Under the pieces are notes generated by a model. That model did no database searches and had not been told where the DNA came from. It saw only the letters and a list, made by a program, of their open reading frames with translations. A DNA stretch of 64,000 bases from Oikopleura dioica (Eukaryota > Animalia > Chordata), in contig OU015569.1 in NCBI GenBank assembly GCA_907165135.1, positions 1,550,001 to 1,614,000 of the forward strand. The letters run 5' to 3'. Below, in pieces: positions 9,050-20,352 of this stretch. The position numbers and the translations under genes are program-made. Within the stretch, counting starts at the first letter, position 1; every line of letters starts with the position of its first letter.

Positions 9050-9792
9050 ATGGCTTCTCTCGCCAGTCGCGTTTCCATAGTTCAGGGAGACATCACAAAA
9101 CTGCGCTGCGACGCGATTGTTAATGCTGCCAACAGGTCCCTCCTCGGAGGTGGAGGAGTAGACGGTGCAATTCATCGAGCCGCTGGGAGGAAACTGTTGG
9201 AAGAATGTAGAACGCTGAAGGGTTGCGAAACTGGCCAAGCGAAGATAACCAAAGGCTACAACCTGCCAGGTTTGTAATCCTTCAAGTCAATTTATTAACA
9301 GCCTTTATAGCTAAACATGTGATACACACCGTCGGACCAAACGTCTACAGAGGAGAAAACAAAGAACTGCTCCGAGACGCGTACCAAAACTCGCTCAACG
9401 TCGCCATCGAAAACAAACTAAAATCAATCGCATTCCCTTGCATATCCACTGGCATCTACGGCTATCCACAAGAGGATGCCGCCCATGTAGCGTTAAATGT
9501 GACGAAGAAAACGCTCGAGGAAAACGAAGTGCTCGAACAGGTCATCTTCTGCGTCTTTCTCGACAGCGACAGAAAGATTTACGAAGAGCTCAAGCCAAAG
9601 TACTTTCCGGAAGCGGAGAAGTCCGCAGAAGGAAAAAAGGAAGAAAACGGATCTTCGGAGTCCGATTTACTCAATCTTCCAGACGTGCCTTCAGAGGAGC
9701 CAGTACCGAAGTTGGCCAAAATCGAGCCGGAAAAAGAGGCAGCCGAAACTCCTGACGAGCAAAAAATAAAAGAAGAAAAATCTGAGTTATAA
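9050..9792 (+). CDS. MACROD: Macro-domain ADP-ribose glycohydrolase (MacroD1/2-like), two exons, acidic tail
   Basis: [34 protein letters not shown] and [13 protein letters not shown] signatures; one short intron near 9271-9311. Confidence 0.9.
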
Positions 9793-9932
9793 TTTATCGG
9801 CAATACATGTTCAACTTTAATTCCTTCAAAAAAAAAAGACATTATTAAAAAACGCAACGATTTTCTTGTTAAGAATGCTTATTTAAAAATCTGTTAGCAA
9901 GAGCTGATGCGTAAAAATTCGTTCGGATAGTT

Positions 9933-12900
9933 ATGGCAGCTAGAAAGTACCGATTAAATTGGAATGCTGGCTTCATTCATGCGACAAAGGTTTCTTTCCG
10001 TTTTCGCTCCTTTTTGTTTTATATAATTTTTTATTAACGGGTTATTTATAGCGCGGGTGCTCGTTTGGTCTCCGCATTTCAAACGAAAATGTAGAGCTTG
10101 ATGAATCACAAGTCCAACAATCCGGAGGAGGAATCGATGTTGTGGCAATTGCTGGTGTTATTCGCGCGAGCGGAGAGGAAAACTGCAACTGTCTTGGAGC
10201 CGTGACACGAGCCTCTGTAGTCGGCAAAGTCGGATCGACTGACATTCTTAAAATCAACGAATTCAAGGTAAATGAGACGACCGTCTTTTTTGGAATAAAT
10301 TCTAGGACCCTTGCCCTCGATTTGACAATTCATAGAACATTCTAGTTTGTGCGAATAAACGCGCCAGAAAAAGAAGTTGCTTCAAAACAACTCAACGACC
10401 TAGCAAAACTACTCGGAGAAGGCGAATACTACTTTAGCATCAATCAAAGCGACGAGCGCCCGTTTGACATCACAACTTCATTCCAGAATCAACTCTCTGG
10501 AAGTGAAGGCAATTCTGAGTACTTCTGGAACAGGGTAAATAGTCTTGGAATTTTACTTCTCCATCAACGATTGCTAGAGTTTGTGGGCGCATTTCGCGCC
10601 GCTAGAAGAGCAAATAAAAGCTAGCTGGTTGATAAGGATAACATGTGGCTACATCAATTTCAAAAAATGTTATGCTGGAGCAAGACAAATCCACGTGGGG
10701 CTCATTTCGAGACTTTCCACTGGCCGCGTTGGAACTCGATTCATGACCAGGTTAGCTCTGAAAGTGTTGGTCTTTCGCTTACTTATGCTGTCAGAGGAAT
10801 CGACGATAGTGGCTATGTTGCAAATTATGTTGAATCGGAAACAATCGTGATCGAAGGAGAAAACATTCTAGCGCATCTTCAAATACGCGGATCCGTACCA
10901 ACCTTCTGGGAACAGCCAGGAATAAATTTTGGCCAACACAAATGCAACATTGTGCGAAACCTTGAAGGCTCATACCCAGCCAGTCTCAAGCATTTCTCGC
11001 GAATTCTCGAGTCGTTTTCTGTTTGTAGAATTGGTTGGTTAATTCAAGTGTAGAGCTTTTATATGCTATTTTTCTTAGTTAACTTGCTGGGAAAAGGCGA
11101 GGGAGAAGATAAAGTCTCATCTGCTTTTGCTGAAGTTATAACTAAAGCACAAAACCAGGTACATTTTTATCTACGTCTCCTATAATTGCATAAATTTGAT
11201 TATTCAGGGTCTTCAATTGGAGTACACAGCAATCGATTACCACAAAGAAACACCAAAAGGCAAGAACTTGCACTCTGTCCTGATGGGTCACATCGGCGAA
11301 GCTCTCTCAAATCATCAGTTCTTGAATTTCACAAACGGAAGCTTTGTCTCTCAGCAAAGTGGCGTCGTTCGAACAAACTGTCTCGACTGTCTTGACCGGA
11401 CCAATGCCGTGCAAACAGTGATAGGTATCTTTGTTTCTTTTGAATGTTCAATCGTTCATGATGATGTTAAGCGTTGGAATGTCTTGGGAAGATTTTAACA
11501 GAAATGAACATCGATGGAAGTCAAGCATCGCGCTTCAACGAGACCATCAAATCGCTCTGGACAGAAAGTGGCAACGCGATTTCACACATGTACGCCGGTA
11601 CCGGCGCATTAGAATCTGGCTCAAAGCTACAAGATGCCACAAGATCTATCTCAAGAACAATCAAGAACAACACTGGCTCGGACGGTACTCTTCGTTGATT
11701 TTTATTTTCAAATCTTGAACTTGTTTTTAGAGAACAAGCAACGATTGATTGAGCGACTTCTCTATGGTGACCTTCCTATGACTCTTCGTGGACAGAAGAT
11801 TCTTTCTCTGCTCGGAAACGAAGCCGTTTCTTTGTCAAAAGAAATTTCTGAGAATATCTACTTCCGTCGCGACGAATTTGCAACAGAGTTGCCCATTCGT
11901 GTTTCTTGCTGCACTTGGAACGTCAATGGGGGCACCCGTTCGCCTAATTTGAACACCGATCTTGGCGAAGACAAGTTTGCCGACTGGTTGTTAGGAAAAG
12001 CTGATAGAAGACGAGCGGCGTACGATTTTACTGGCGAAGCAGAATCCGATCTTAGCTTTGTTGCAGGAGATATAATTACAGTCACAGGAACGAGTTCAAA
12101 TTGAATTTAATACCGCTTGAATCTAAGCCGGCTGATAGATAGTTTTGAGCTTGATGAAAGGAGAATTAGAAGGCGGCGAGTGGCTTCAAGGATCATGTGG
12201 AGATCGCCAAGGAATTTTCCCGGCCGCATTTGTAGAAGATATCCCGGAAGACACTTACATCGCGTCTTTCGACTATTGTTCTGAGGAGACCGGAGATCTG
12301 GCCTTCATGAAGGGCGAGAAAATTATCGTGATTGATAAGTCGAAGGGCGACTGGTGGGAAGGCGAGTCTTCAGATGGAAGACGAGGAATTTTTCCAGCTG
12401 CTTTCGTGGAGCTCGAAGACCCTCGTGGTCGGCCACCAGATGTTCTTGTCGTCGCGTTTCAAGAAATCGTCGACCTGACTCCTGATAATATTGCCAAAGC
12501 ACCGACAAAGAATATGGAAGTTTGGACGGAACTCCTTGAAAGCGCCCTGATCGAAAAAGGGCTCAACTACATCCACCTTCGCTCTGAACAATTAGTTGGT
12601 GCTGCGATTTGCGTTTGGGTACGCCAGCATCACATGGATCACATTCAAAATTTGTCTTTCACCAAAGTCAAGACTGGTATCAATGCCGGTGTGTACACTG
12701 GCGGCAATAAAGGTGCGCTATTGGTGAAATTCCAGCTGTACAACTCTTCAATGGCTTTCGTGTGTGCACATTTCGCCGCACATCAGAAGCAAATCGCCCA
12801 GCGAAATTCAGACATGCACGAGATTTACCAAAAAGGAATGTTCCAGCGAAGCTCGCCTTTGTCCGCTCAAGAGTGGCAATTCTGGCTCGGAGATTTGAAC

Positions 12901-14574
12901 TATCGCATTGATATTGACCGTCAGCAGTGCATAAACTCAATTGAAAATCAGGACTGGAATACTCTTCTCGAAAAAGACCAGCTTATCGATCAAATGGCAA
13001 AGAACAAAGTTTTCAATGGCTGGCAAGAGGGAAAGATTCGTTTTGCCCCGACTTACAAGTACGACAAGGCATCCGATGTGTATGATTCATCAGAAAAGGC
13101 GAGAATACCTGCCTGGTGCGATCGCGTCTTGTGGCAACGCGAGACCGAAGATAATGGCGGATCAGTTCTCGATTGTGGGCATGTAGTGCATTACGGTCGA
13201 TATGAAATCAAAAGCTCAGACCATCGTCCTGTATGCTGTCTCATCGACATTAATGTGCTTCGCAGCGACGAAAGCATTCTTTATGAGGTCATCAACGAAG
13301 AAATTAATCGAGCGACGAACTCATCGTCGTCTAGAACGCCAAGTTACGAGAGCCAGGAGCAACCTCAAAGCGTCTATCAAGAACAGACTCAAAATTTCTA
13401 CCAGGAACCGCCACCGCAGCCTGACCATGTTCCTGCTTCTATTCCTGTCCAGTCGGCAGACGCGAGTGATATGGCGTGGAATGATCCTTTCGGCACTGTC
13501 CAACAAGTCGAACAAAAGGCAGCAAAGAAATCTGGTCCACCGCGTCCTCCACCTCCAAAACGACCTCCTCCGCCAAAACTTCAAAATCAAAATGGTGTGC
13601 CAGGAGGTCCTTCGCGGCCACCTCCTCCTTCTAAGAAGTCGCCGCCGCCATTGCCTTCGAATAAGGGTACGATCAAGCGAATCCAAGTGGCACGCTCCGC
13701 GCCAATACCTCCGTCAGCGGGTCTGCCCAGTCCGCTTAAGCCGATGAAGGCAACAATTTCTTCAGCAAAAGTTCCGCCTATGATTCCTTCACGCCAGCCT
13801 AGCGTCGCGCCTAAAACTAACCATGAATTTGGCAAGCCGTTATCTGCCCCTCCACCAGCATCGATTGCCCGCGCTAGACCTGGTCGAGCAGCTCCATCTC
13901 CAGTTAATCAAAGTATAACGCCTTTTCCAACTGCTCCGTCCCAGCCTCAGACAAAAGCTCCTCCTGCTATTCCTAATAGAACACCCGCCCAGCCACCCGG
14001 ATACTCCTCAACTCAACTGCTTCAGCCTAAGATTGCACACTCCGCTCCTCAGCCCGTTTACAGCATACCACCTATCGTCAATAACAACTCGATTTCGTCA
14101 TCGACAGCTCAGCCTGAAATACCCATCAGAGAGCAGTTCCTCAAACACATGAACATCACTCCAACCATCGACCCATTCGCGGCCAAGCCCGATGACAATG
14201 TTTATCAAGTGCCCCCTAGTGACAGTTTCGACGACTTCTTCGCTAACCGAGCAAGACAGGCACCACCTCCAGCACCAAAACCAGCAGTTGCGACGAATCC
14301 ATTCGCAACCAGTGCCCCTCGGCCAACTACACTTGGTCCATTTGCCCAAACCTTGCAACCTGCTCCGGCGAACCCTTTTCAGCAGCAACAATTGCCTTTC
14401 TACTCGTCAGTGCCGGTGCAACCGATGATGCAGCAGCCTCAGCAACAGCCACAGAGGATAGGAGTGAGCGACTTGCCAGCGCCTCTGATGCCTTCGAAAT
14501 CGGCCACGATCTCGTCGAGCGGATCCAAGCCCCGTGCAGCCATCAACTTATCCGACTTCGACCCCTTAAGTTAA
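9933..14574 (+). CDS. SYNJ1: Synaptojanin (Sac1 + inositol 5-phosphatase with two inserted SH3 domains + Pro-rich tail)
   Basis: Sac1 motifs RGSVPTFWEQPG and RTNCLDCLDRTN (CX5RT). 5-phosphatase motifs TWNVNGG, FWLGDLNYRI, PTYKYD, PAWCDRVLW and SDHRP. Pro-rich tail carries NPF/DPF motifs. Confidence 0.92.
12010..12420 (+). other. Tandem SH3 domains inside the synaptojanin 5-phosphatase domain
   Basis: AYDFTGEAESDLSFVAGDIITVTG|ELEGGEWLQG..GIFPAAFVE and ASFDYCSEETGDLAFMKGEKI..DWWEG..GIFPAAFVE, located between DWLL and PDVLVVAFQE. Confidence 0.9.
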
Positions 14575-14876
14575 ACTCACTTCCTTGTAAATTACACCCC
14601 ATCTATCCAGTGCAATCCACATATCAACTACATGTTCAATATAACTTATTTTAACATGCTTTAAAGATATCTACCGCGACTTGTAATCACTGATCTTCGT
14701 GTGCGTCATTTTACTACTATTCAAAAAGCTTTTTACTATGCTCATGTCTTCATTTTTCTTCATAAGCTTAATCAGTGATATTAGTTATCAGATAAATTGT
14801 ACCAACTCAAGTTTTAGTTCTCGATTTTTAGACATTGTCTGATGACGATTTTTGGAAGAATGCAAGATATACGCTA

Positions 14877-17800
14877 ATGCTTCCAAAAATGTTTGGAATA
14901 ATTTATTTATTGGGAGTGGCTCTTTGCACCGACCTCTGTCACATCAATGAAGAAAAGTTCGTTCGACTCTGGGATGGCGAAGACTTTCTCCTTGCTGCGG
15001 ATATCGATACAATCACCGCTTCGCCGCTCAACAACGACATGGAGCACAGGCGTCTTGTCGAAGAATGCCGCGGCATCGTGGCGATTGACTATATCTACTC
15101 GGAGAAAACTATCGTCTGGGCTGAGTCAGAGACTGCTCCGCCAAGAATAAACGTTTACCAAACTGCTAAAAATGAGTTTTGGTACTTCGATCTCCACGAG
15201 GGTTCCGATATTAAGTCCATGGCTGTTGATTGGGTGGCGAAGAATGTTTACTGGTTCGACGATACTGACGAGGCGATCAAAGTCTGTAGTCTTTTCAGCT
15301 GCCAAGCACTCTCCGATGAAGAGCCGAAAAAGAAGTCATGTTCGTGTAAAACTCTCTTGCTAAAAATCCAGAATCAAAAGGCATCTCGCGATCTGGTAAT
15401 AGATTCACATGGAAGTCGCCTGTTCTTCATCAATGAAAACTCCCTGGAGTCGGTGAATCTAGATGGAACGAACAGACAAGTGCTAATTAACTCCAGAGAT
15501 GTAGTGGGAAATAAAATCTCCGGCTTAGCTATGTATGATAGAAACAACCTGATTTACGGCTCTCCCGAGCTGAAAATACATAAGCTGAACCTCATCACTG
15601 ATACTTCGCAAACAGCTGCCCTTCCTCTTTCGCAAACGATGCTGTTTTCATCGAAAAGATTCCTCTCGCGCGAAATGGTTGAGCAGACAGCTGAACGAGC
15701 TGGCTTGAGCTTTATTCTTTCGTTGACGAGTCTCTCGTCCTCGCTTCAGGATCCATTGGCGAATCCTTGTAAAGATTCGCAATGCTCTGATCTCTGTCTA
15801 CGCTCTCCAACAGGGTTTACTTGCTCTTGCTCGGCTGGCCTTGCTCTTTATCCTAATTCAACTACACTTTGCCGAGAACATCCGGAATCTTTCATCATAC
15901 TGGCTAAGGAACAAGTTCTTCGGAGAATATCACTTGATACCGAAGAGCACGAATACATGAAGTTGGTAGAATACGGCGATTCCTCTCGTTCTATCACCGC
16001 AGTTTCAATTGATCCCTTGTTCGGGAAGATATATTATTCGACCGTCTACTCGGATGAAGACGGAAAAAGCATTGGATCGACAATCCATAGTGTCAGAATC
16101 GACGGTTCTAACCAGGTCGACTTGATTTCGGACGGTCTTGCAGAAGTGGAAGGTTTAGCGCTGGACTCACAGAATCAATTGATCTACTGGGCTGACAAAA
16201 TAATGATGCACATCGAAGTGGCTGCATTGACTTGCAGATGCAACGTACGTGGTTGCTTGCACGAGCATTGTCGCCGCATCATCGTAACATCGAAGGACCA
16301 CAAGCCAGACTTCCAGCCGCGCTCGATCGTCGCTGCGCATGGCTACATCTTCTGGACAGACATTGCTTCCTGCAAGATCGTTCGCGCTCACGGCAGCGGT
16401 GGATCCCAAGACGTGCTCAGAACGTACAACACTCGCACATCGCATGGTTGCCCGAATAAAATCAGCATCTCGGATGATGGGAATAAACTTTTTGTCATCG
16501 TGCGAGACTTGAAAATTCGTGTAGAAAGCTACATCGAAGTTCTGCACAACATAATTCCCGAGCTTTCTCCTGGAGCAAAGATTGAGTCTCAATTATTTAA
16601 AAGATTTCCAGGGCGTGATTTTGAGAGCATCAAAGTCTTCAAAAACTCAGTTTTTGTAGTTGGACAGAGTGCGCCACTAACTGAAGTAAATGCAGGCGGG
16701 CAAGAAAAAAGATTCTACGGGACTGGGCACTTGAACAGTGATGTGCTGGACATACAAGATCTGTCCGTAAAAATCGGAAAAAATGAGCAGATCTGCGACT
16801 TTATTCAATTCGCGAAGCCGGGAAATGGACGAAACTGCCAATGTCCAGATGGACTATCCAATACACTCGACACTTCTTCGGCAGGCTTGGGCAGATCCTG
16901 CAAAGGTCCAGAGCTTGACCTGCTGTTTCTTCTATTGGACGACAATGATAATCGATATAAATTCCACCAGCTCCCGATTGGTGACGAGACAAGCAACGAC
17001 CGATCGACAGAAGTGCACGAGTTTGAGCAAAATAATCTTCGCGAGCCTTCTTTCGACTTTCACTACAAAACTGACCGAATATTTTTCTTCGCCAAGGAAA
17101 AATTTACCACGCTTTACACAGCGCAGCGCAAGAAAACCGGCAAGTTTCGAAAACCAGTTCAGATAACCAACGTTGGTCTCGAAGGAGCCGTCAAGCTTGC
17201 TGTCGATTGGATAGGAGATAGCGTTTACTGGACGAATAACATCCTCCATCGTGTGGAGCAAATTGTCTTCGATGGAAGCGTTCGACGCACGATCGTGCAT
17301 GACTGCGACCAGCCTCATGCAATAGCTGTTGATTCATCTGCTGGTTACATTTTTTACTCCGATTTTTCTACCTCTGACGATTTTGCCAGTCTCAGTCGTG
17401 TCGATATGTCTGGCGAGAACAAAGTATCAGTTCTCGGGCCACACTCAGATTACAGGCAGATTCTTTCTATCTCTCTCGACATCATCAAGCAGGAAATGTA
17501 CTTGCTCGACGAAATGAAGAATTCGATTGTCAAAGTCCCCTACGACGGGACTACGGCGGAGATTGTGTATTCTTATCAAGCCGAAACGCCGTCTATCACT
17601 TCTATTTCCTTCTATCACAGCGTTATTTACTGGTCTGAGTTGAAAGATCGGAGCTCTTGTGAGCTAAAGTCTCTCCAGCTTCGCGATTACAGCAACTCTA
17701 GAGCGAAAACTATCGGCAAACTGAGTAGCAAACCCCTTGGACTCACTGTAGTAGCTCCTCAGGTCGGCTGGGGGCAATGCAACATACCAAGGCCGAGTAA

Positions 17801-20352
17801 CTATCCTCAGTACAAAGAGAGCATTTGCATTGCGAAGCCGACAGAAGACGAACACATACACAAATCTGAAAATGTCTGCTCGACTCACTTTAGCCTTCAG
17901 TACGACATTTGCAAGGCGCCAAAAGAGTTTCTGATCTTTGCCCAGGAGCGAGAAATTTCGCGTGTTCTTCTGAAACATGCAAGTGATACTACCGACCAGA
18001 TCATTCCAATTCACGGAATCGGGAAGACCTTTTCAATGGCATGGGATACTTATGCTGGCAAGGGACGCTTTTATTGGGTGGATTCAGATAAGGATAACCA
18101 AATCTTCTCATCCAGAGGCGTCGGAGATGCACCAGTCTTGTTCCTGCCTAAAGAGCGGTCATATGCGAAGAATATTGCTATCCACGAATTGAGTGGAATG
18201 ATTTTCTGGACACTCGCCAGCAGAGACGATCGGAACGAAGAAGCGACAATTTGCTACGCCTTCCTGACTGAAGACGGCGAAGGAAAAGGCGGAAAGTGTT
18301 TGGACGAGTGGACGCGTTCTGAGCACCGAAGTATGATGAGCAACATCTGGAACAACATCCGCCCAGATCTGATCGTCATCCACCAGCTGACGGGAACTAT
18401 CATCTTCACCAACGACTGTAAAACTTCTGACGAGTCTTGCCAGCTCATCTTCACGACCAATATTTTCGAAGGTAAAATCTAGTAGAATGAAACATAATTA
18501 TTTTTACTCCTGTAGTTTCTTCTGGCCGCATATCAGCTCCAACTCCATGCGTCGTTTTTGAAGCGACGCCTCCTGTAACCGCTATCGCTGTGTACAGCCC
18601 ACCAGAAGATCCTTACCTCGTAAAACTGTTCTGGTCCGACGAATTCAAGATTTATCACAAGGAGTTTACCATCCCCCGCCATCGAGCGTCAATCTGTCCT
18701 GATCAAGGAGAGAGCAAAACTTTGAGTCTCAATTGTGATATAGAATGTTGGTATATCATCTGAGTCCACAATAACATTCATTTCATTAGCAAAAATCATC
18801 CCCAACGGAATTGCAATCGCCGAAGACGAGCTCTTCTGGGTCGACGGCTCCGCACTCAAACGGTCGAAAGTCGGCCAAGGACAGAGTTGCGCGCCAACTC
18901 AAACCGTCATTGATCGCGAACTCAAAAATCTAACCGCCATTGCAATTGTTAGAAGCAACGATCGCATCAATGACCTCCGCTACGAGTGCATCCACAAAAA
19001 CTGTTCTCATTTTTGTGTTGGTAAGATTTTCATCTTCGATAAAAATTCTGTTTTTAACCTTTTAAAAATAGCTGACTCGTCGCTGTCATCATCGGTCCAG
19101 TGCAAGTGCCCACCTGGATTGGAACTGATGCGGAATGCCAAAGACTGCGATAAAGGAAAATGCGGAGATAAATTCACCTGCGGAGCGGGATCAGGGTAAA
19201 AACTTTCTTTCTCGGGCCATTTTTCCTATTTTTGTATAGAACGAGTCCTGATTGTATTGAGCAGATTTATGTTTGCGATGGAAACTCAGACTGCGTCGAT
19301 GGGAGTGATGAAAGCCCAAATCTTTGCAATCGTTGTTTGGAAAACGAGTTTTCTTGTGGAAATGGCGAGTGTATTGATAGGTAGGAGATCAGAAGGAACT
19401 TTCAATTGACATGAATTTTAGTGATAAACACTGCAATGGAATCCCAGATTGCCAAGATGGAAGTGATGAACGCATATGTCCGATTACATGCGAGTTAAAT
19501 GTAAGTACTGATTTGCGTTGATCTTTTGTTTCACTTTGAAAAAAAGGCAAGAAAGGAGCGGCATTATATAAGCACCCAAGCGCTTTGTTATGCAACTTTT
19601 GTTTGAGGTGACAAGCTAGCCAAATGAGCAAGCATTTCGAAAGTAAAGAGATTATTTTTTCTAGCAAAACCGGTGTTACGACGCTCTTAAATGCTACGAT
19701 GTCTCGGAGAAATGTAATGGCGTGGATGACTGCGATGATGGAAGCGATGAGCAAGACTGCCCCGAGCCTATTGACGCGGTAAACTTTTTATTTTTCTTTC
19801 ATTCTTTTGAAGGATGTTTTTAGACCGCGAAGATTGTTATTTACATCGTCGCCTTCTTCGTCTTCTTCCTGACCATAATCATCATCATCATCGTGGTGCT
19901 TACAAGACCACGGCCAATCACACAAGAGCAAAACATTCATTTACAAATTATTCAACCCCCACCGGTAAATCATTTATTTTCCAAACAATAATAAATTTGA
20001 TTCATTTCAGCCGTTGAGTCATCGTTCGAGCATGATGCCTCCTCCTTATCACTCGCATGCGGACAGTGTCTACTCCGCCGAATACGAAGTCAATGTTCCG
20101 TTGATGGCTCCACCGCCAAGTGTCATTTCCTCGGGAGTGGCGGCTCCTCTACGGCTCCCTCTCTCTCACCGCCAGCGTCAGCAACAATTCAGCCATGATA
20201 CTCTTTCGGAGAGCAGTCGTGGCTCTGGAACGGGCGATTCGAATCCGCCCTCCTGCAAAGTAAATATAAGACGCCTCTCGCAAGAAACAGACCTGATTGT
20301 TCCGGGTTCTTATGCGCCTTGCTCAACCCCTATTCCAACCTCTGAAGAATGA
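14877..20352 (+). CDS. LRP6: LRP5/6-type Wnt co-receptor
   Basis: Signal peptide, four YWTD-like propeller/EGF modules (mostly in one ~3.6-kb exon), three LDLa repeats, TM IVIYIVAFFVFFLTIIIIIIVVL and a Ser/Pro-rich tail. This is the LRP5/6 domain order. Confidence 0.85.

What the first reader, a model, noticed from the sequence alone, without database searches (positions are those of the whole stretch)
11900..14574. Synaptojanin with two SH3 domains inserted in the 5-phosphatase domain and no RRM
Seen: between DWLL and PDVLVVAFQE there are two complete SH3 domains in frame, and the tail goes from the phosphatase directly into Pro-rich sequence with no recognisable RRM. Known: that position is a short loop in the synaptojanins I know, and synaptojanin is normally recruited by SH3 partners (endophilin, amphiphysin, intersectin) through its Pro-rich tail. 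Inference: this enzyme carries both the SH3 readers and their PxxP ligands (PPRPPPPKRPPPPK), so it could autoinhibit, self-assemble, or bind dynamin directly and bypass adaptors. I know no synaptojanin with this architecture.
Basis: partly seen in the sequence, partly recalled or inferred. Interest (0 to 1): 0.82.

Follow-up and report, generated by a model that had tools for sequence, protein, structure and literature searches.

The report
Tunicate synaptojanin with built-in SH3 pair
This gene encodes the animal's only synaptojanin, a membrane-lipid phosphatase, and it really does carry two SH3 docking domains spliced into its catalytic domain; the same layout sits unremarked in public records of sea squirts and other tunicates, so it is a lineage-wide trait and not a one-off.

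Summary
Observation confirmed. The + strand gene at 9933-14574 has 10 exons and tiny GT..AG introns, and my exon model sums to about 1383 aa. It encodes a Sac1 domain and a 5-phosphatase domain, with two SH3 domains in frame between WNVNGG..DWLL and PDVLVVAFQE. A Pro-rich tail follows, and there is no RRM-like DUF1866 domain.

The SH3 block is real coding sequence:
- Pfam scores SH3-2 at 3.8e-18.
- Against a 76%-identical ocean metagenome relative, replacement changes are rare (pN 0.11) while silent sites are saturated (pS 0.95).
- A plankton metatranscriptome contig runs unspliced from SH3-2 into the phosphatase.

The same insertion at the same site occurs in Styela clava, Ciona intestinalis, Clavelina lepadiformis and Phallusia mammillata, and in unnamed transcript contigs. 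WNVNGG to GF[QE]E spans 158-181 aa in these, against 32-53 aa in the starfish, bird and Capsaspora sequences measured. It is a tunicate-wide trait, present in databases; I found no paper describing it.

Outright loss of the RRM-like domain is specific to this lineage. Ascidians keep it, some in diverged form.

This genome still has endophilin-like and amphiphysin-like genes, so adaptor loss is not supported. What the SH3 pair binds (own tail, dynamin or another partner) is untested.

Interest is moderate.

The parts
9933..14574 (+). Whole synaptojanin gene. The model has 10 exons: 9933-9989, 10052-10267, 10346-10534, 10578-10747, 10792-11024, 11079-11158, 11208-11424, 11472-11684, 11731-12093 and 12161-14574 (stop included). 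Coding length is 4149 nt, or 1383 aa.
   Evidence: Reading frames and GT..AG sites. The exon lengths sum to a multiple of three. Introns 10268-10345 and 10748-10791 are removed in metatranscriptome contigs. The other boundaries are inferred.
10052..11684 (+). Sac1 (Syja_N) phosphatase domain, spread over exons 2-8. The catalytic CX5R(T/S) motif CLDCLDRT lies at 11379-11402.
   Evidence: Pfam Syja_N on exon pieces: 8.8e-21 and 2.4e-4. The own-genome Syja_N search hits window 10781-11203. The motif was read.
11886..11996 (+). N-terminal piece of the 5-phosphatase domain: first strand with WNVNGG, then the DWLL helix. It lies upstream of the insertion.
   Evidence: Translation. Alignment with P0121 and with other synaptojanins. 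Pfam Exo_endo_phos2 starts only at profile position 22 after the insert.
12012..12093 (+). SH3-1, N-terminal half (AAYDF..GDIITVTGT).
   Evidence: Pfam SH3_1 profile positions 1-25, E 7.7e-6, 25.9 bits. Aligns to SH3-1 of P0121.
12094..12160 (+). Intron inside SH3-1, 67 nt, GT..AG. This is the preferred model. Alternatives are GA 12088..AG 12160, or GT 12094..AG 12142.
   Evidence: There is a stop at 12102-12104. In the related contig L005, homology starts at window 12157 and the only upstream AG corresponds to window 12159-12160. Orthologue spacing V-x-x-ELxGGxW also fits. No RNA read covers this junction.
12161..12240 (+). SH3-1, C-terminal half (ELEGGEWLQG..GIFPAAFVEDI).
   Evidence: Colinear with SH3-1 of P0121, Styela and Ciona. 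Conserved against L005.
12253..12414 (+). SH3-2, complete, with only about 8 residues before the phosphatase's second strand.
   Evidence: Pfam SH3_1 3.8e-18, SH3_2 1.1e-14, SH3_9 5.3e-11. PDB SH3 matches down to 3.4e-13. RNA contig 12282-12479 is unspliced across it. pN 0.09 against pS 0.95 versus L005.
12424..13236 (+). Main body of the 5-phosphatase domain. It holds AFQE, GNKGA, CAHFAAH, WLGDLNYR, PAWCDRVLW and SDHRPV.
   Evidence: Pfam Exo_endo_phos2 1.3e-76, profile positions 22-286. Human SYNJ1 7A17 and 7A0V at 5e-71.
13237..14571 (+). Disordered tail with no RRM-like domain. The Pro-rich core at 13528-13660 includes PKRPPPPK. The tail holds 8 PxxPx[RK] and 5 [RK]xxPxxP motifs, NPF at 14296 and 14371, DPF at 13483 and 14170, and FDDFF at 14227.
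   Evidence: No Pfam hit at E<=10. Motif scan. Alignment against RRM-bearing orthologues.

Best explanation
This is the single-copy synaptojanin gene of a fast-evolving appendicularian tunicate.

The protein is a dual phosphoinositide phosphatase. Its Sac1 domain keeps the CX5R(T/S) motif and its 5-phosphatase domain keeps the catalytic motifs listed under parts.

A tandem pair of SH3 domains is inserted in the loop between the first helix and the second strand of the 5-phosphatase fold. The insertion is translated and under purifying selection. It was inherited from the tunicate ancestor, because the same two SH3 domains sit at the same site in ascidians of all three orders and in further unnamed tunicate-like transcripts. 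They are absent from the vertebrate, echinoderm, insect and Capsaspora enzymes examined.

This lineage has additionally deleted the RRM-like DUF1866 domain.

Inferred mechanism (not shown):
- By the topology of this enzyme fold, as known from APE1 and DNase I, the insertion loop lies at the end of the domain opposite the active site. The SH3 pair should therefore not block catalysis.
- Instead it would present two canonical PxxP-binding grooves to the cytosol.
- These most likely bind proline-rich partners at endocytic sites. The enzyme's own tail, in cis or between molecules, is the ligand present at the highest local concentration (my odds about 0.35). Dynamin or other Pro-rich endocytic proteins are the alternative (about 0.35).
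- The tail keeps a PKRPPPPK motif like the vertebrate PKRPPPPR, plus NPF, DPF and FxDxF motifs, and the genome keeps endophilin-like and amphiphysin-like genes. So the SH3 pair probably adds to normal adaptor-based recruitment and does not replace it.

The confidence below is for identity, reality and phylogenetic spread, not for the mechanism.
For: Domains.

Only Sac1+5-phosphatase gene in the genome.

Same architecture elsewhere:
- P0121 aligns to query residues 4-372 in one stretch. Its Pfam layout is Syja_N + 2 SH3 + Exo_endo_phos2 (from profile position 24) + DUF1866.
- Styela, Ciona, Clavelina, Phallusia and the JGI and Logan clusters all list PF02383 + SH3 + PF22669.
- WNVNGG to GF[QE]E spans 158-181 aa in nine tunicate sequences, against 32-53 aa in Acanthaster, Rhea and Capsaspora. 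They share the motifs ELEGGEW and GIFPAA[YF]V.
- Every cluster member in which the insert could be located keeps it.

Expression and selection:
- Spliced RNA contigs, plus an unspliced contig over 12282-12479.
- 76% nt but 90% aa identity to TARA contig L005, with pN 0.108 against pS 0.95 in the SH3 block.
- The JGI and Logan orthologues are full ORFs on contigs of 4-9 kb, which look like transcripts and include the SH3 block.

RRM loss here only. The Ciona fragment H2XQI8 is named as an RRM-domain protein.

SH3 binding residues (aromatic ALYDF-type pair, acidic RT loop, Trp, Pro..[YF]) can be read in both domains.

Adaptors retained. Tail motifs.
Against: - No RNA read covers 11993-12281, so the SH3-1 intron boundaries and the inclusion of SH3-1 in this species' mRNA rest on homology and selection.
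- Three bulk RNA runs under the same species label did not lay on the gene at >=90% identity. They probably come from a divergent lineage.
- The phosphatase-domain tree puts the window on a very long branch (2.35) beside a rotifer, not with ascidians. Tunicate affinity therefore rests on the shared insertion and genome features, not on that tree.
- The mechanism is inference only. The one complex prediction gave no answer.
- The position of the loop relative to the active site comes from general fold knowledge, not from a model measured here.
Confidence: 0.85

Rival explanations
1. The SH3 pair works in trans. It binds the Pro-rich domain of dynamin or of another endocytic protein, tying the uncoating phosphatase directly to the fission machinery, and the enzyme's own tail is not its main ligand.
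For: The nearest non-synaptojanin relatives of the tandem SH3 block are multi-SH3 endocytic scaffolds: SH3D19, dynamin-binding protein and intersectin. The binding residues are canonical. The tail keeps motifs for its usual partners.
Against: No partner was tested. A fungal RhoGAP-SH3 protein scores as well as the scaffolds do, so the similarity is generic. The enzyme's own tail is tethered and rich in PxxP.
Confidence: 0.35
2. The architecture is a novelty unique to this genome.
For: The first word search, using the window's exon, listed no SH3-bearing synaptojanin in its top 120.
Against: That blank came from candidate sampling. The exhaustive search and a second word search found the layout in Styela, Ciona, Clavelina and Phallusia and in five unnamed clusters, at the same site and with shared motifs.
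Confidence: 0.02
3. In this species the SH3 block is removed from most mature mRNA, by an alternative 3' splice site inside the last exon, so the working enzyme is a plain synaptojanin.
For: RNA coverage is missing for 11993-12281.
Against: - SH3-2 is fused to the phosphatase in one exon with no intron between them, and a transcript contig crosses that junction unspliced.
- The one GT..AG pair I checked by hand around DWLL and PDV (11987 or 11990 to 12439) breaks the reading frame.
- Silent sites are saturated while the protein is 90% conserved across the block.
- All orthologue transcripts keep the block.
Confidence: 0.05
4. The SH3 domains no longer bind ligands and persist as a structural spacer in a tolerant surface loop.
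For: The Asn of the usual P-x-N-Y motif is Ala in both domains (FPAAFV), and the Tyr is Phe. SH3 domains inserted in enzymes sometimes lose function.
Against: The hydrophobic pocket residues, the Trp and the acidic RT loops are kept across all tunicate classes. The block has been retained and conserved since the tunicate ancestor, even in a genome known for losing genes.
Confidence: 0.1

Closest known systems
Tunicate synaptojanins in public records: Ciona intestinalis XP_078491504.1, Styela clava XP_039262553.2, Clavelina lepadiformis CAK8692974.1, Phallusia mammillata CAB3266760.1 (A0A6F9DUS2)
   Same: They have Sac1, then a 5-phosphatase domain interrupted at the same loop by two SH3 domains, then a Pro-rich tail. 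The alignment is colinear and they share the motifs ELEGGEW and GIFPAA[YF]V.
   Different: They keep an RRM-like block after the phosphatase: clear DUF1866 in Styela, diverged in Ciona, Clavelina and Phallusia. The window's protein has low-complexity sequence there. The window's catalytic domain is much more diverged, with about 40-45% identity and a branch length of 2.35. Its SH3-2 to phosphatase linker is only about 8 residues.
Vertebrate synaptojanin 1 (5-phosphatase domain solved as PDB 7A17 and 7A0V)
   Same: It has the Sac1 CX5R(T/S) motif, the 5-phosphatase catalytic motifs and a Pro-rich tail with a PKRPPPP[RK] motif. The long isoform has NPF and DPF-type motifs.
   Different: There are no SH3 domains. 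The loop is about 25 residues (48 aa from WNVNGG to GFEE in Rhea). An RRM-like DUF1866 domain is present.
Phospholipase C-gamma: regulatory SH2-SH2-SH3 array inserted within the catalytic domain (from general knowledge, not tested here)
   Same: It is a phosphoinositide-metabolising enzyme whose catalytic fold is interrupted by modular peptide-binding domains that regulate it.
   Different: The fold is different (TIM barrel), as are the inserted domains. Autoinhibition is shown experimentally there, whereas here nothing about regulation is shown. This is an analogy only.
Tandem-SH3 modules with short linkers, such as p47phox, STAC2 and sorbin/CAP (PDB 1NG2, 6B26, 2MOX among the best SH3 matches)
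   Same: Two SH3 domains are separated by about 6 residues. The STAC2 and sorbin chains align to the query in two stretches each. From general knowledge, the p47phox pair is held shut by an internal segment.
   Different: Sequence similarity is generic SH3 (E about 1e-13 to 1e-9). There is no evidence here that the two domains form one joint groove.

Membership tests
Synaptojanin (Sac1 + inositol polyphosphate 5-phosphatase) | N-terminal Sac1 domain with catalytic CX5R(T/S) | tested here: met
   Pfam Syja_N on exon pieces (8.8e-21; 2.4e-4). CLDCLDRT lies at 11379-11402.
Synaptojanin (Sac1 + inositol polyphosphate 5-phosphatase) | Central 5-phosphatase domain with the catalytic motifs, closest to synaptojanin among 5-phosphatases | tested here: met
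   Exo_endo_phos2 at 1.3e-76. The best solved match is human SYNJ1 at 5e-71, against 9e-47 for INPP5B. WNVNGG, AFQE, WLGDLNYR, PAWCDRVLW and SDHRPV can be read.
Synaptojanin (Sac1 + inositol polyphosphate 5-phosphatase) | RRM-like DUF1866 domain after the phosphatase | tested here: not met
   No Pfam hit at E<=10 in 13210-14571. The alignment shows low-complexity sequence in its place. This is a lineage loss: most animal synaptojanins listed carry PF08952.
Synaptojanin (Sac1 + inositol polyphosphate 5-phosphatase) | C-terminal Pro-rich tail with SH3-ligand motifs | tested here: met
   8 PxxPx[RK] and 5 [RK]xxPxxP motifs, and PKRPPPPK.
Synaptojanin (Sac1 + inositol polyphosphate 5-phosphatase) | Enzymatic activity on PI(4,5)P2 and PI4P | not testable with these tools
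   This needs a phosphatase assay on expressed protein.
SH3 domain | Profile match above the curated cut-off | tested here: met
   SH3-2: SH3_1 scores 65.3 bits against a cut-off of 22.9. The N half of SH3-1 alone scores 25.9 bits. The whole of SH3-1 could not be scored because the joined sequence was not built.
SH3 domain | Ligand-groove residues (two aromatics of the ALYDY motif, acidic RT loop, conserved Trp, Pro and Tyr/Phe of the 3-10 helix) | tested here: met
   Read in both domains and in nine orthologues. The usual Asn is Ala. Binding itself was not tested.
Tunicate SH3-bearing synaptojanin clade | Two SH3 domains at the same loop of the 5-phosphatase domain, colinear with the ascidian proteins | tested here: met
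   One HMMER stretch, query 4-372 to P0121 602-988. BLASTP colinear at 39% identity. Insert lengths and motifs agree.
Tunicate SH3-bearing synaptojanin clade | Groups with tunicate sequences in a tree of the catalytic domain | tested here: inconclusive
   The window sits on a branch of length 2.35 and is drawn to a rotifer. The tool itself warns that this placement is unsure.

The most novel reading that the evidence does not exclude
Tunicate synaptojanins carry an SH3-to-Pro-rich-tail switch within a single polypeptide. The tandem SH3 pair in the catalytic domain binds the enzyme's own tail. This either holds the enzyme closed until endophilin or dynamin competes the tail away, or links molecules into clusters at endocytic sites. 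It would be a lineage-specific rewiring of vesicle uncoating that arose in the tunicate ancestor, and no paper in the searched library describes it.
Probability: 0.25. Interest if true: 0.6.

Novelty: new variant of a known kind. Interest (0 to 1): 0.42.

Why it matters
Synaptojanin is normally passive in recruitment: SH3 adaptors read its tail. In tunicates, the closest relatives of vertebrates, the enzyme itself carries two SH3 readers inside its catalytic domain. They have been kept since the tunicate ancestor, even in this heavily streamlined genome.

That gives three things:
- a clean rare genomic change that marks tunicates;
- a natural example of modular domains tolerated within a 5-phosphatase fold;
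- a testable case of possible built-in autoregulation or self-clustering of an endocytic enzyme.

The layout is already visible in public protein records, and nothing yet shows what the SH3 pair binds.

Tried and rejected
1. The first word search, with the window's last exon, showed no SH3-bearing relative. This was a sampling blank, not absence, and overturned it.

2. Three bulk RNA-seq runs carrying the same species label laid nothing on the gene at >=90% identity.

3. I guessed from memory that the SH3 domains were of the CIN85/CD2AP type. No CIN85 or CD2AP chain was among the 60 PDB matches listed; the best were STAC2, sorbin, GRB2 and Crk. I dropped the idea.

4. Complex prediction of SH3-2 (12241-12429) with the Pro-rich core of the tail (13507-13689) returned 'no answer', score 0.03 against a mark of 0.34. 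This is evidence neither for nor against binding.

5. The catalytic-domain tree could not place the window because of its long branch.

6. A donor gene for the SH3 pair could not be named. SH3D19, dynamin-binding protein, intersectin and a fungal RhoGAP-SH3 protein all score alike.

7. Five literature searches found no description of SH3 domains in a tunicate synaptojanin. The one ascidian paper that mentions synaptojanin does not discuss its domains.

8. I did not predict a structure. The tool returns no coordinates, so it could not show where the insert sits relative to the active site.

9. I built no joined (spliced) protein and sent none to any tool. All searches used single exons by reference.

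Full report
**What is in the sequence**

The window is eukaryotic, with very short GT..AG introns. G000 is 64.28 Mb in 19 contigs. This is consistent with the appendicularian Oikopleura dioica, but that is my inference because the tools code the organism's name.

On the + strand, a gene runs from an ATG at 9933 to a stop at 14572-14574. From reading frames and splice sites I place ten exons:
- 9933-9989
- 10052-10267
- 10346-10534
- 10578-10747
- 10792-11024
- 11079-11158
- 11208-11424
- 11472-11684
- 11731-12093
- 12161-14574

The coding length is 4149 nt, a multiple of three, giving 1383 aa. The introns are 43-78 nt. Two of them (10268-10345 and 10748-10791) are removed in contigs of a marine plankton metatranscriptome. 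The other boundaries are inferred.

**Domains**

Pfam finds:
- Syja_N on the upstream exons, with the Sac1 catalytic motif CLDCLDRT at 11379-11402;
- SH3_1 profile positions 1-25 at the end of exon 9;
- in the last exon, a full SH3 domain (E 3.8e-18) followed at once by Exo_endo_phos2 from profile position 22 to 286 (E 1.3e-76).

Profile positions 1-21 of the phosphatase domain (WNVNGG and the DWLL helix) lie in exon 9, upstream of SH3-1.

The catalytic motifs are intact, and the closest solved structure is the human SYNJ1 5-phosphatase domain (7A17 and 7A0V, 5e-71).

The 454 residues after the phosphatase match no Pfam family even at E<=10.

The genome has three Sac-domain loci and three 5-phosphatase loci. 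Only this locus has both, so it is the only synaptojanin.

**The intron inside SH3-1**

The frame from DWLL stops at 12102-12104, so SH3-1 is split. Several in-frame GT..AG choices exist.

A related genomic contig from a TARA ocean metagenome (L005) aligns to window 12157-12666. Upstream of that point it is AT-rich, with an in-frame stop and a single AG that corresponds to window 12159-12160.

The orthologues also show a fixed spacing, V-x-x-E-L-x-G-G-x-W.

I therefore prefer intron 12094-12160 (67 nt). A non-canonical GA donor at 12088 would match the orthologue spacing exactly. The 49-nt choice (12094-12142) is less likely. No RNA read covers this junction.

**Is the SH3 block real coding sequence?**

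Yes, on four grounds:
- L005 is 76% identical in DNA but 90% identical in protein. In the SH3 block the proportion of replacement differences is 0.108 while silent sites are saturated at 0.95. In the phosphatase part the figures are 0.028 and 0.80.
- A 198-nt metatranscriptome contig covers 12282-12479 without a joint, running from SH3-2 into the phosphatase. Other contigs of the same run are spliced, so the run holds mature mRNA of a near-identical organism.
- SH3-2 and the phosphatase share one exon, so skipping the block would need an internal acceptor. The one candidate pair I checked by hand breaks the frame.
- Every orthologue keeps the block (see below).

**Is the architecture new?**

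No. The exhaustive profile search put a 1594-aa protein (P0121, from a Logan assembly) at the top. It aligns to query residues 4-372 in one stretch. Its Pfam layout is Syja_N, two SH3 domains, Exo_endo_phos2 from profile position 24, and DUF1866.

A word search seeded on its insert and flanks returned the same Pfam combination in:
- Styela clava (62% identity over the region);
- two more Logan clusters;
- Clavelina lepadiformis;
- Ciona intestinalis (named 'synaptojanin');
- Phallusia mammillata;
- two JGI clusters.

The distance from WNVNGG to GF[QE]E is 158-181 residues in these nine sequences. It is 53 in a starfish, 48 in a bird SYNJ1 and 32 in Capsaspora. In the cluster members where the insert could be located, all keep it.

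The window shares insert-specific motifs with them: ELEGGEW, GSCGD/GSCNG and GIFPAA[YF]V.

Vertebrate and echinoderm synaptojanins covered only the flanks, about 21% of the query, and list no SH3 domain.

In a tree of the catalytic domain:
- the ascidians form a clade (95/91) next to the vertebrates;
- the JGI sequences fall inside the Ciona, Clavelina and Phallusia group (99/97), so they may be thaliaceans, but that is a guess;
- the window sits on a branch of length 2.35 and is not placed reliably.

The shared insertion is thus best read as a trait of the tunicate ancestor. I found no paper that mentions it.

**The missing RRM-like domain**

DUF1866 is strong in Styela and in the Logan sequences, weak in Clavelina (E 0.008), and undetected by Pfam in Ciona, Phallusia and the JGI sequences.

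An alignment nonetheless shows a diverged block of about 110 residues, with the alternating hydrophobic pattern of the domain, in all of them. A Ciona fragment is even named as an RRM-domain protein by its source.

Only the window passes, about 25 residues after SDHRPV, into Ser/Gln/Pro-rich sequence. This loss is specific to this lineage.

**How it probably works**

Shown here:
- an apparently competent Sac1 domain and 5-phosphatase domain;
- two SH3 domains with the usual groove residues;

From memory, PKRPPPPR is the endophilin site of SYNJ1, and NPF, DPF and FxDxF are ligands of EH domains and of the AP-2 ear.

The genome keeps an endophilin-like gene (BAR domain plus an SH3 reading ALYDFEPENPGELEF..FFPINYV) and an amphiphysin-like gene. 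So the SH3 pair did not arise to replace lost adaptors.

Inferred: in this enzyme fold, the strands run toward the active site, and the helix after strand 1 returns to the far end. This is known for APE1 and DNase I. The insertion, just before strand 2, should therefore sit opposite the catalytic, membrane-facing end and point into the cytosol.

The linkers are short: about 7, 6 and 8 residues. The pair is therefore held close to the catalytic domain and may act as one unit, as tandem SH3 modules such as p47phox do.

I rate two possibilities as equally likely, about 0.35 each:
- binding to the enzyme's own tail, as autoinhibition or clustering;
- binding to dynamin or another Pro-rich partner.

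The one complex prediction gave no answer and counts for nothing either way.

**Comparison and verdict**

The gene is an orthologue of the annotated tunicate synaptojanins and a diverged member of the synaptojanin family. It fails one usual family feature, the RRM-like domain.

Relative to textbook synaptojanin, the tunicate layout is a new variant of a known kind. It is public as sequence but, as far as I could search, not described.

The claim of uniqueness does not. The functional ideas remain open.

Noticed in passing
window 14604-14650: A 47-nt stretch just after the gene's stop is matched at 90-95% by reads in all three bulk RNA runs of the same species label. Those reads share different flanks on both sides, so they come from some other transcribed locus or a short repeat.
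   Followed up: no
window 9900-14700 versus runs X5-X7; L005: RNA runs filed under the same species label do not lay on this gene at >=90% identity. A TARA metagenome relative is only 76% identical in DNA but 90% identical in protein. The species label seems to cover deeply diverged lineages.
   Followed up: partly
window 9050-9792 (+): The upstream neighbour is a two-exon Macro-domain gene (Pfam Macro 3.6e-19 on exon 1). Its stop lies about 140 nt before the synaptojanin start codon.
   Followed up: partly
window 14835-18482 (+): The downstream neighbour has an uninterrupted 1215-codon frame with LDL-receptor class B (YWTD) repeat signal. It begins about 260 nt after the synaptojanin stop.
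   Followed up: partly
window 12088-12160: A non-canonical GA..AG intron (12088-12160) would give exactly the orthologue spacing in SH3-1 (VTG-ELEGGEW). The canonical GT donor at 12094 adds two residues. Junction reads are needed to decide.
   Followed up: partly
L008 (G000:C2:6081130-6084351, - strand) and L007 (G000:C2:7579701-7582994, + strand): An endophilin-like gene (BAR plus SH3, with the SH3 split by an intron) and an amphiphysin-like gene (BAR plus C-terminal SH3) are present on the same chromosome-scale contig as the synaptojanin gene.
   Followed up: partly
L004:8001-12785: The closest full-length orthologue (P0121, Logan SRR10746996, nearest to Styela) is one uninterrupted 4785-nt frame on a 21.4-kb contig among many short ORFs. 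It is either an intronless gene or a contig built from transcripts. The organism was not identified.
   Followed up: no
P0285 and P0287 (JGI contigs of about 4.3 kb): These two SH3-bearing synaptojanins from metagenome or metatranscriptome data have an extra insert of about 12 residues in SH3-1. They group with Ciona, Clavelina and Phallusia and may be thaliaceans.
   Followed up: no
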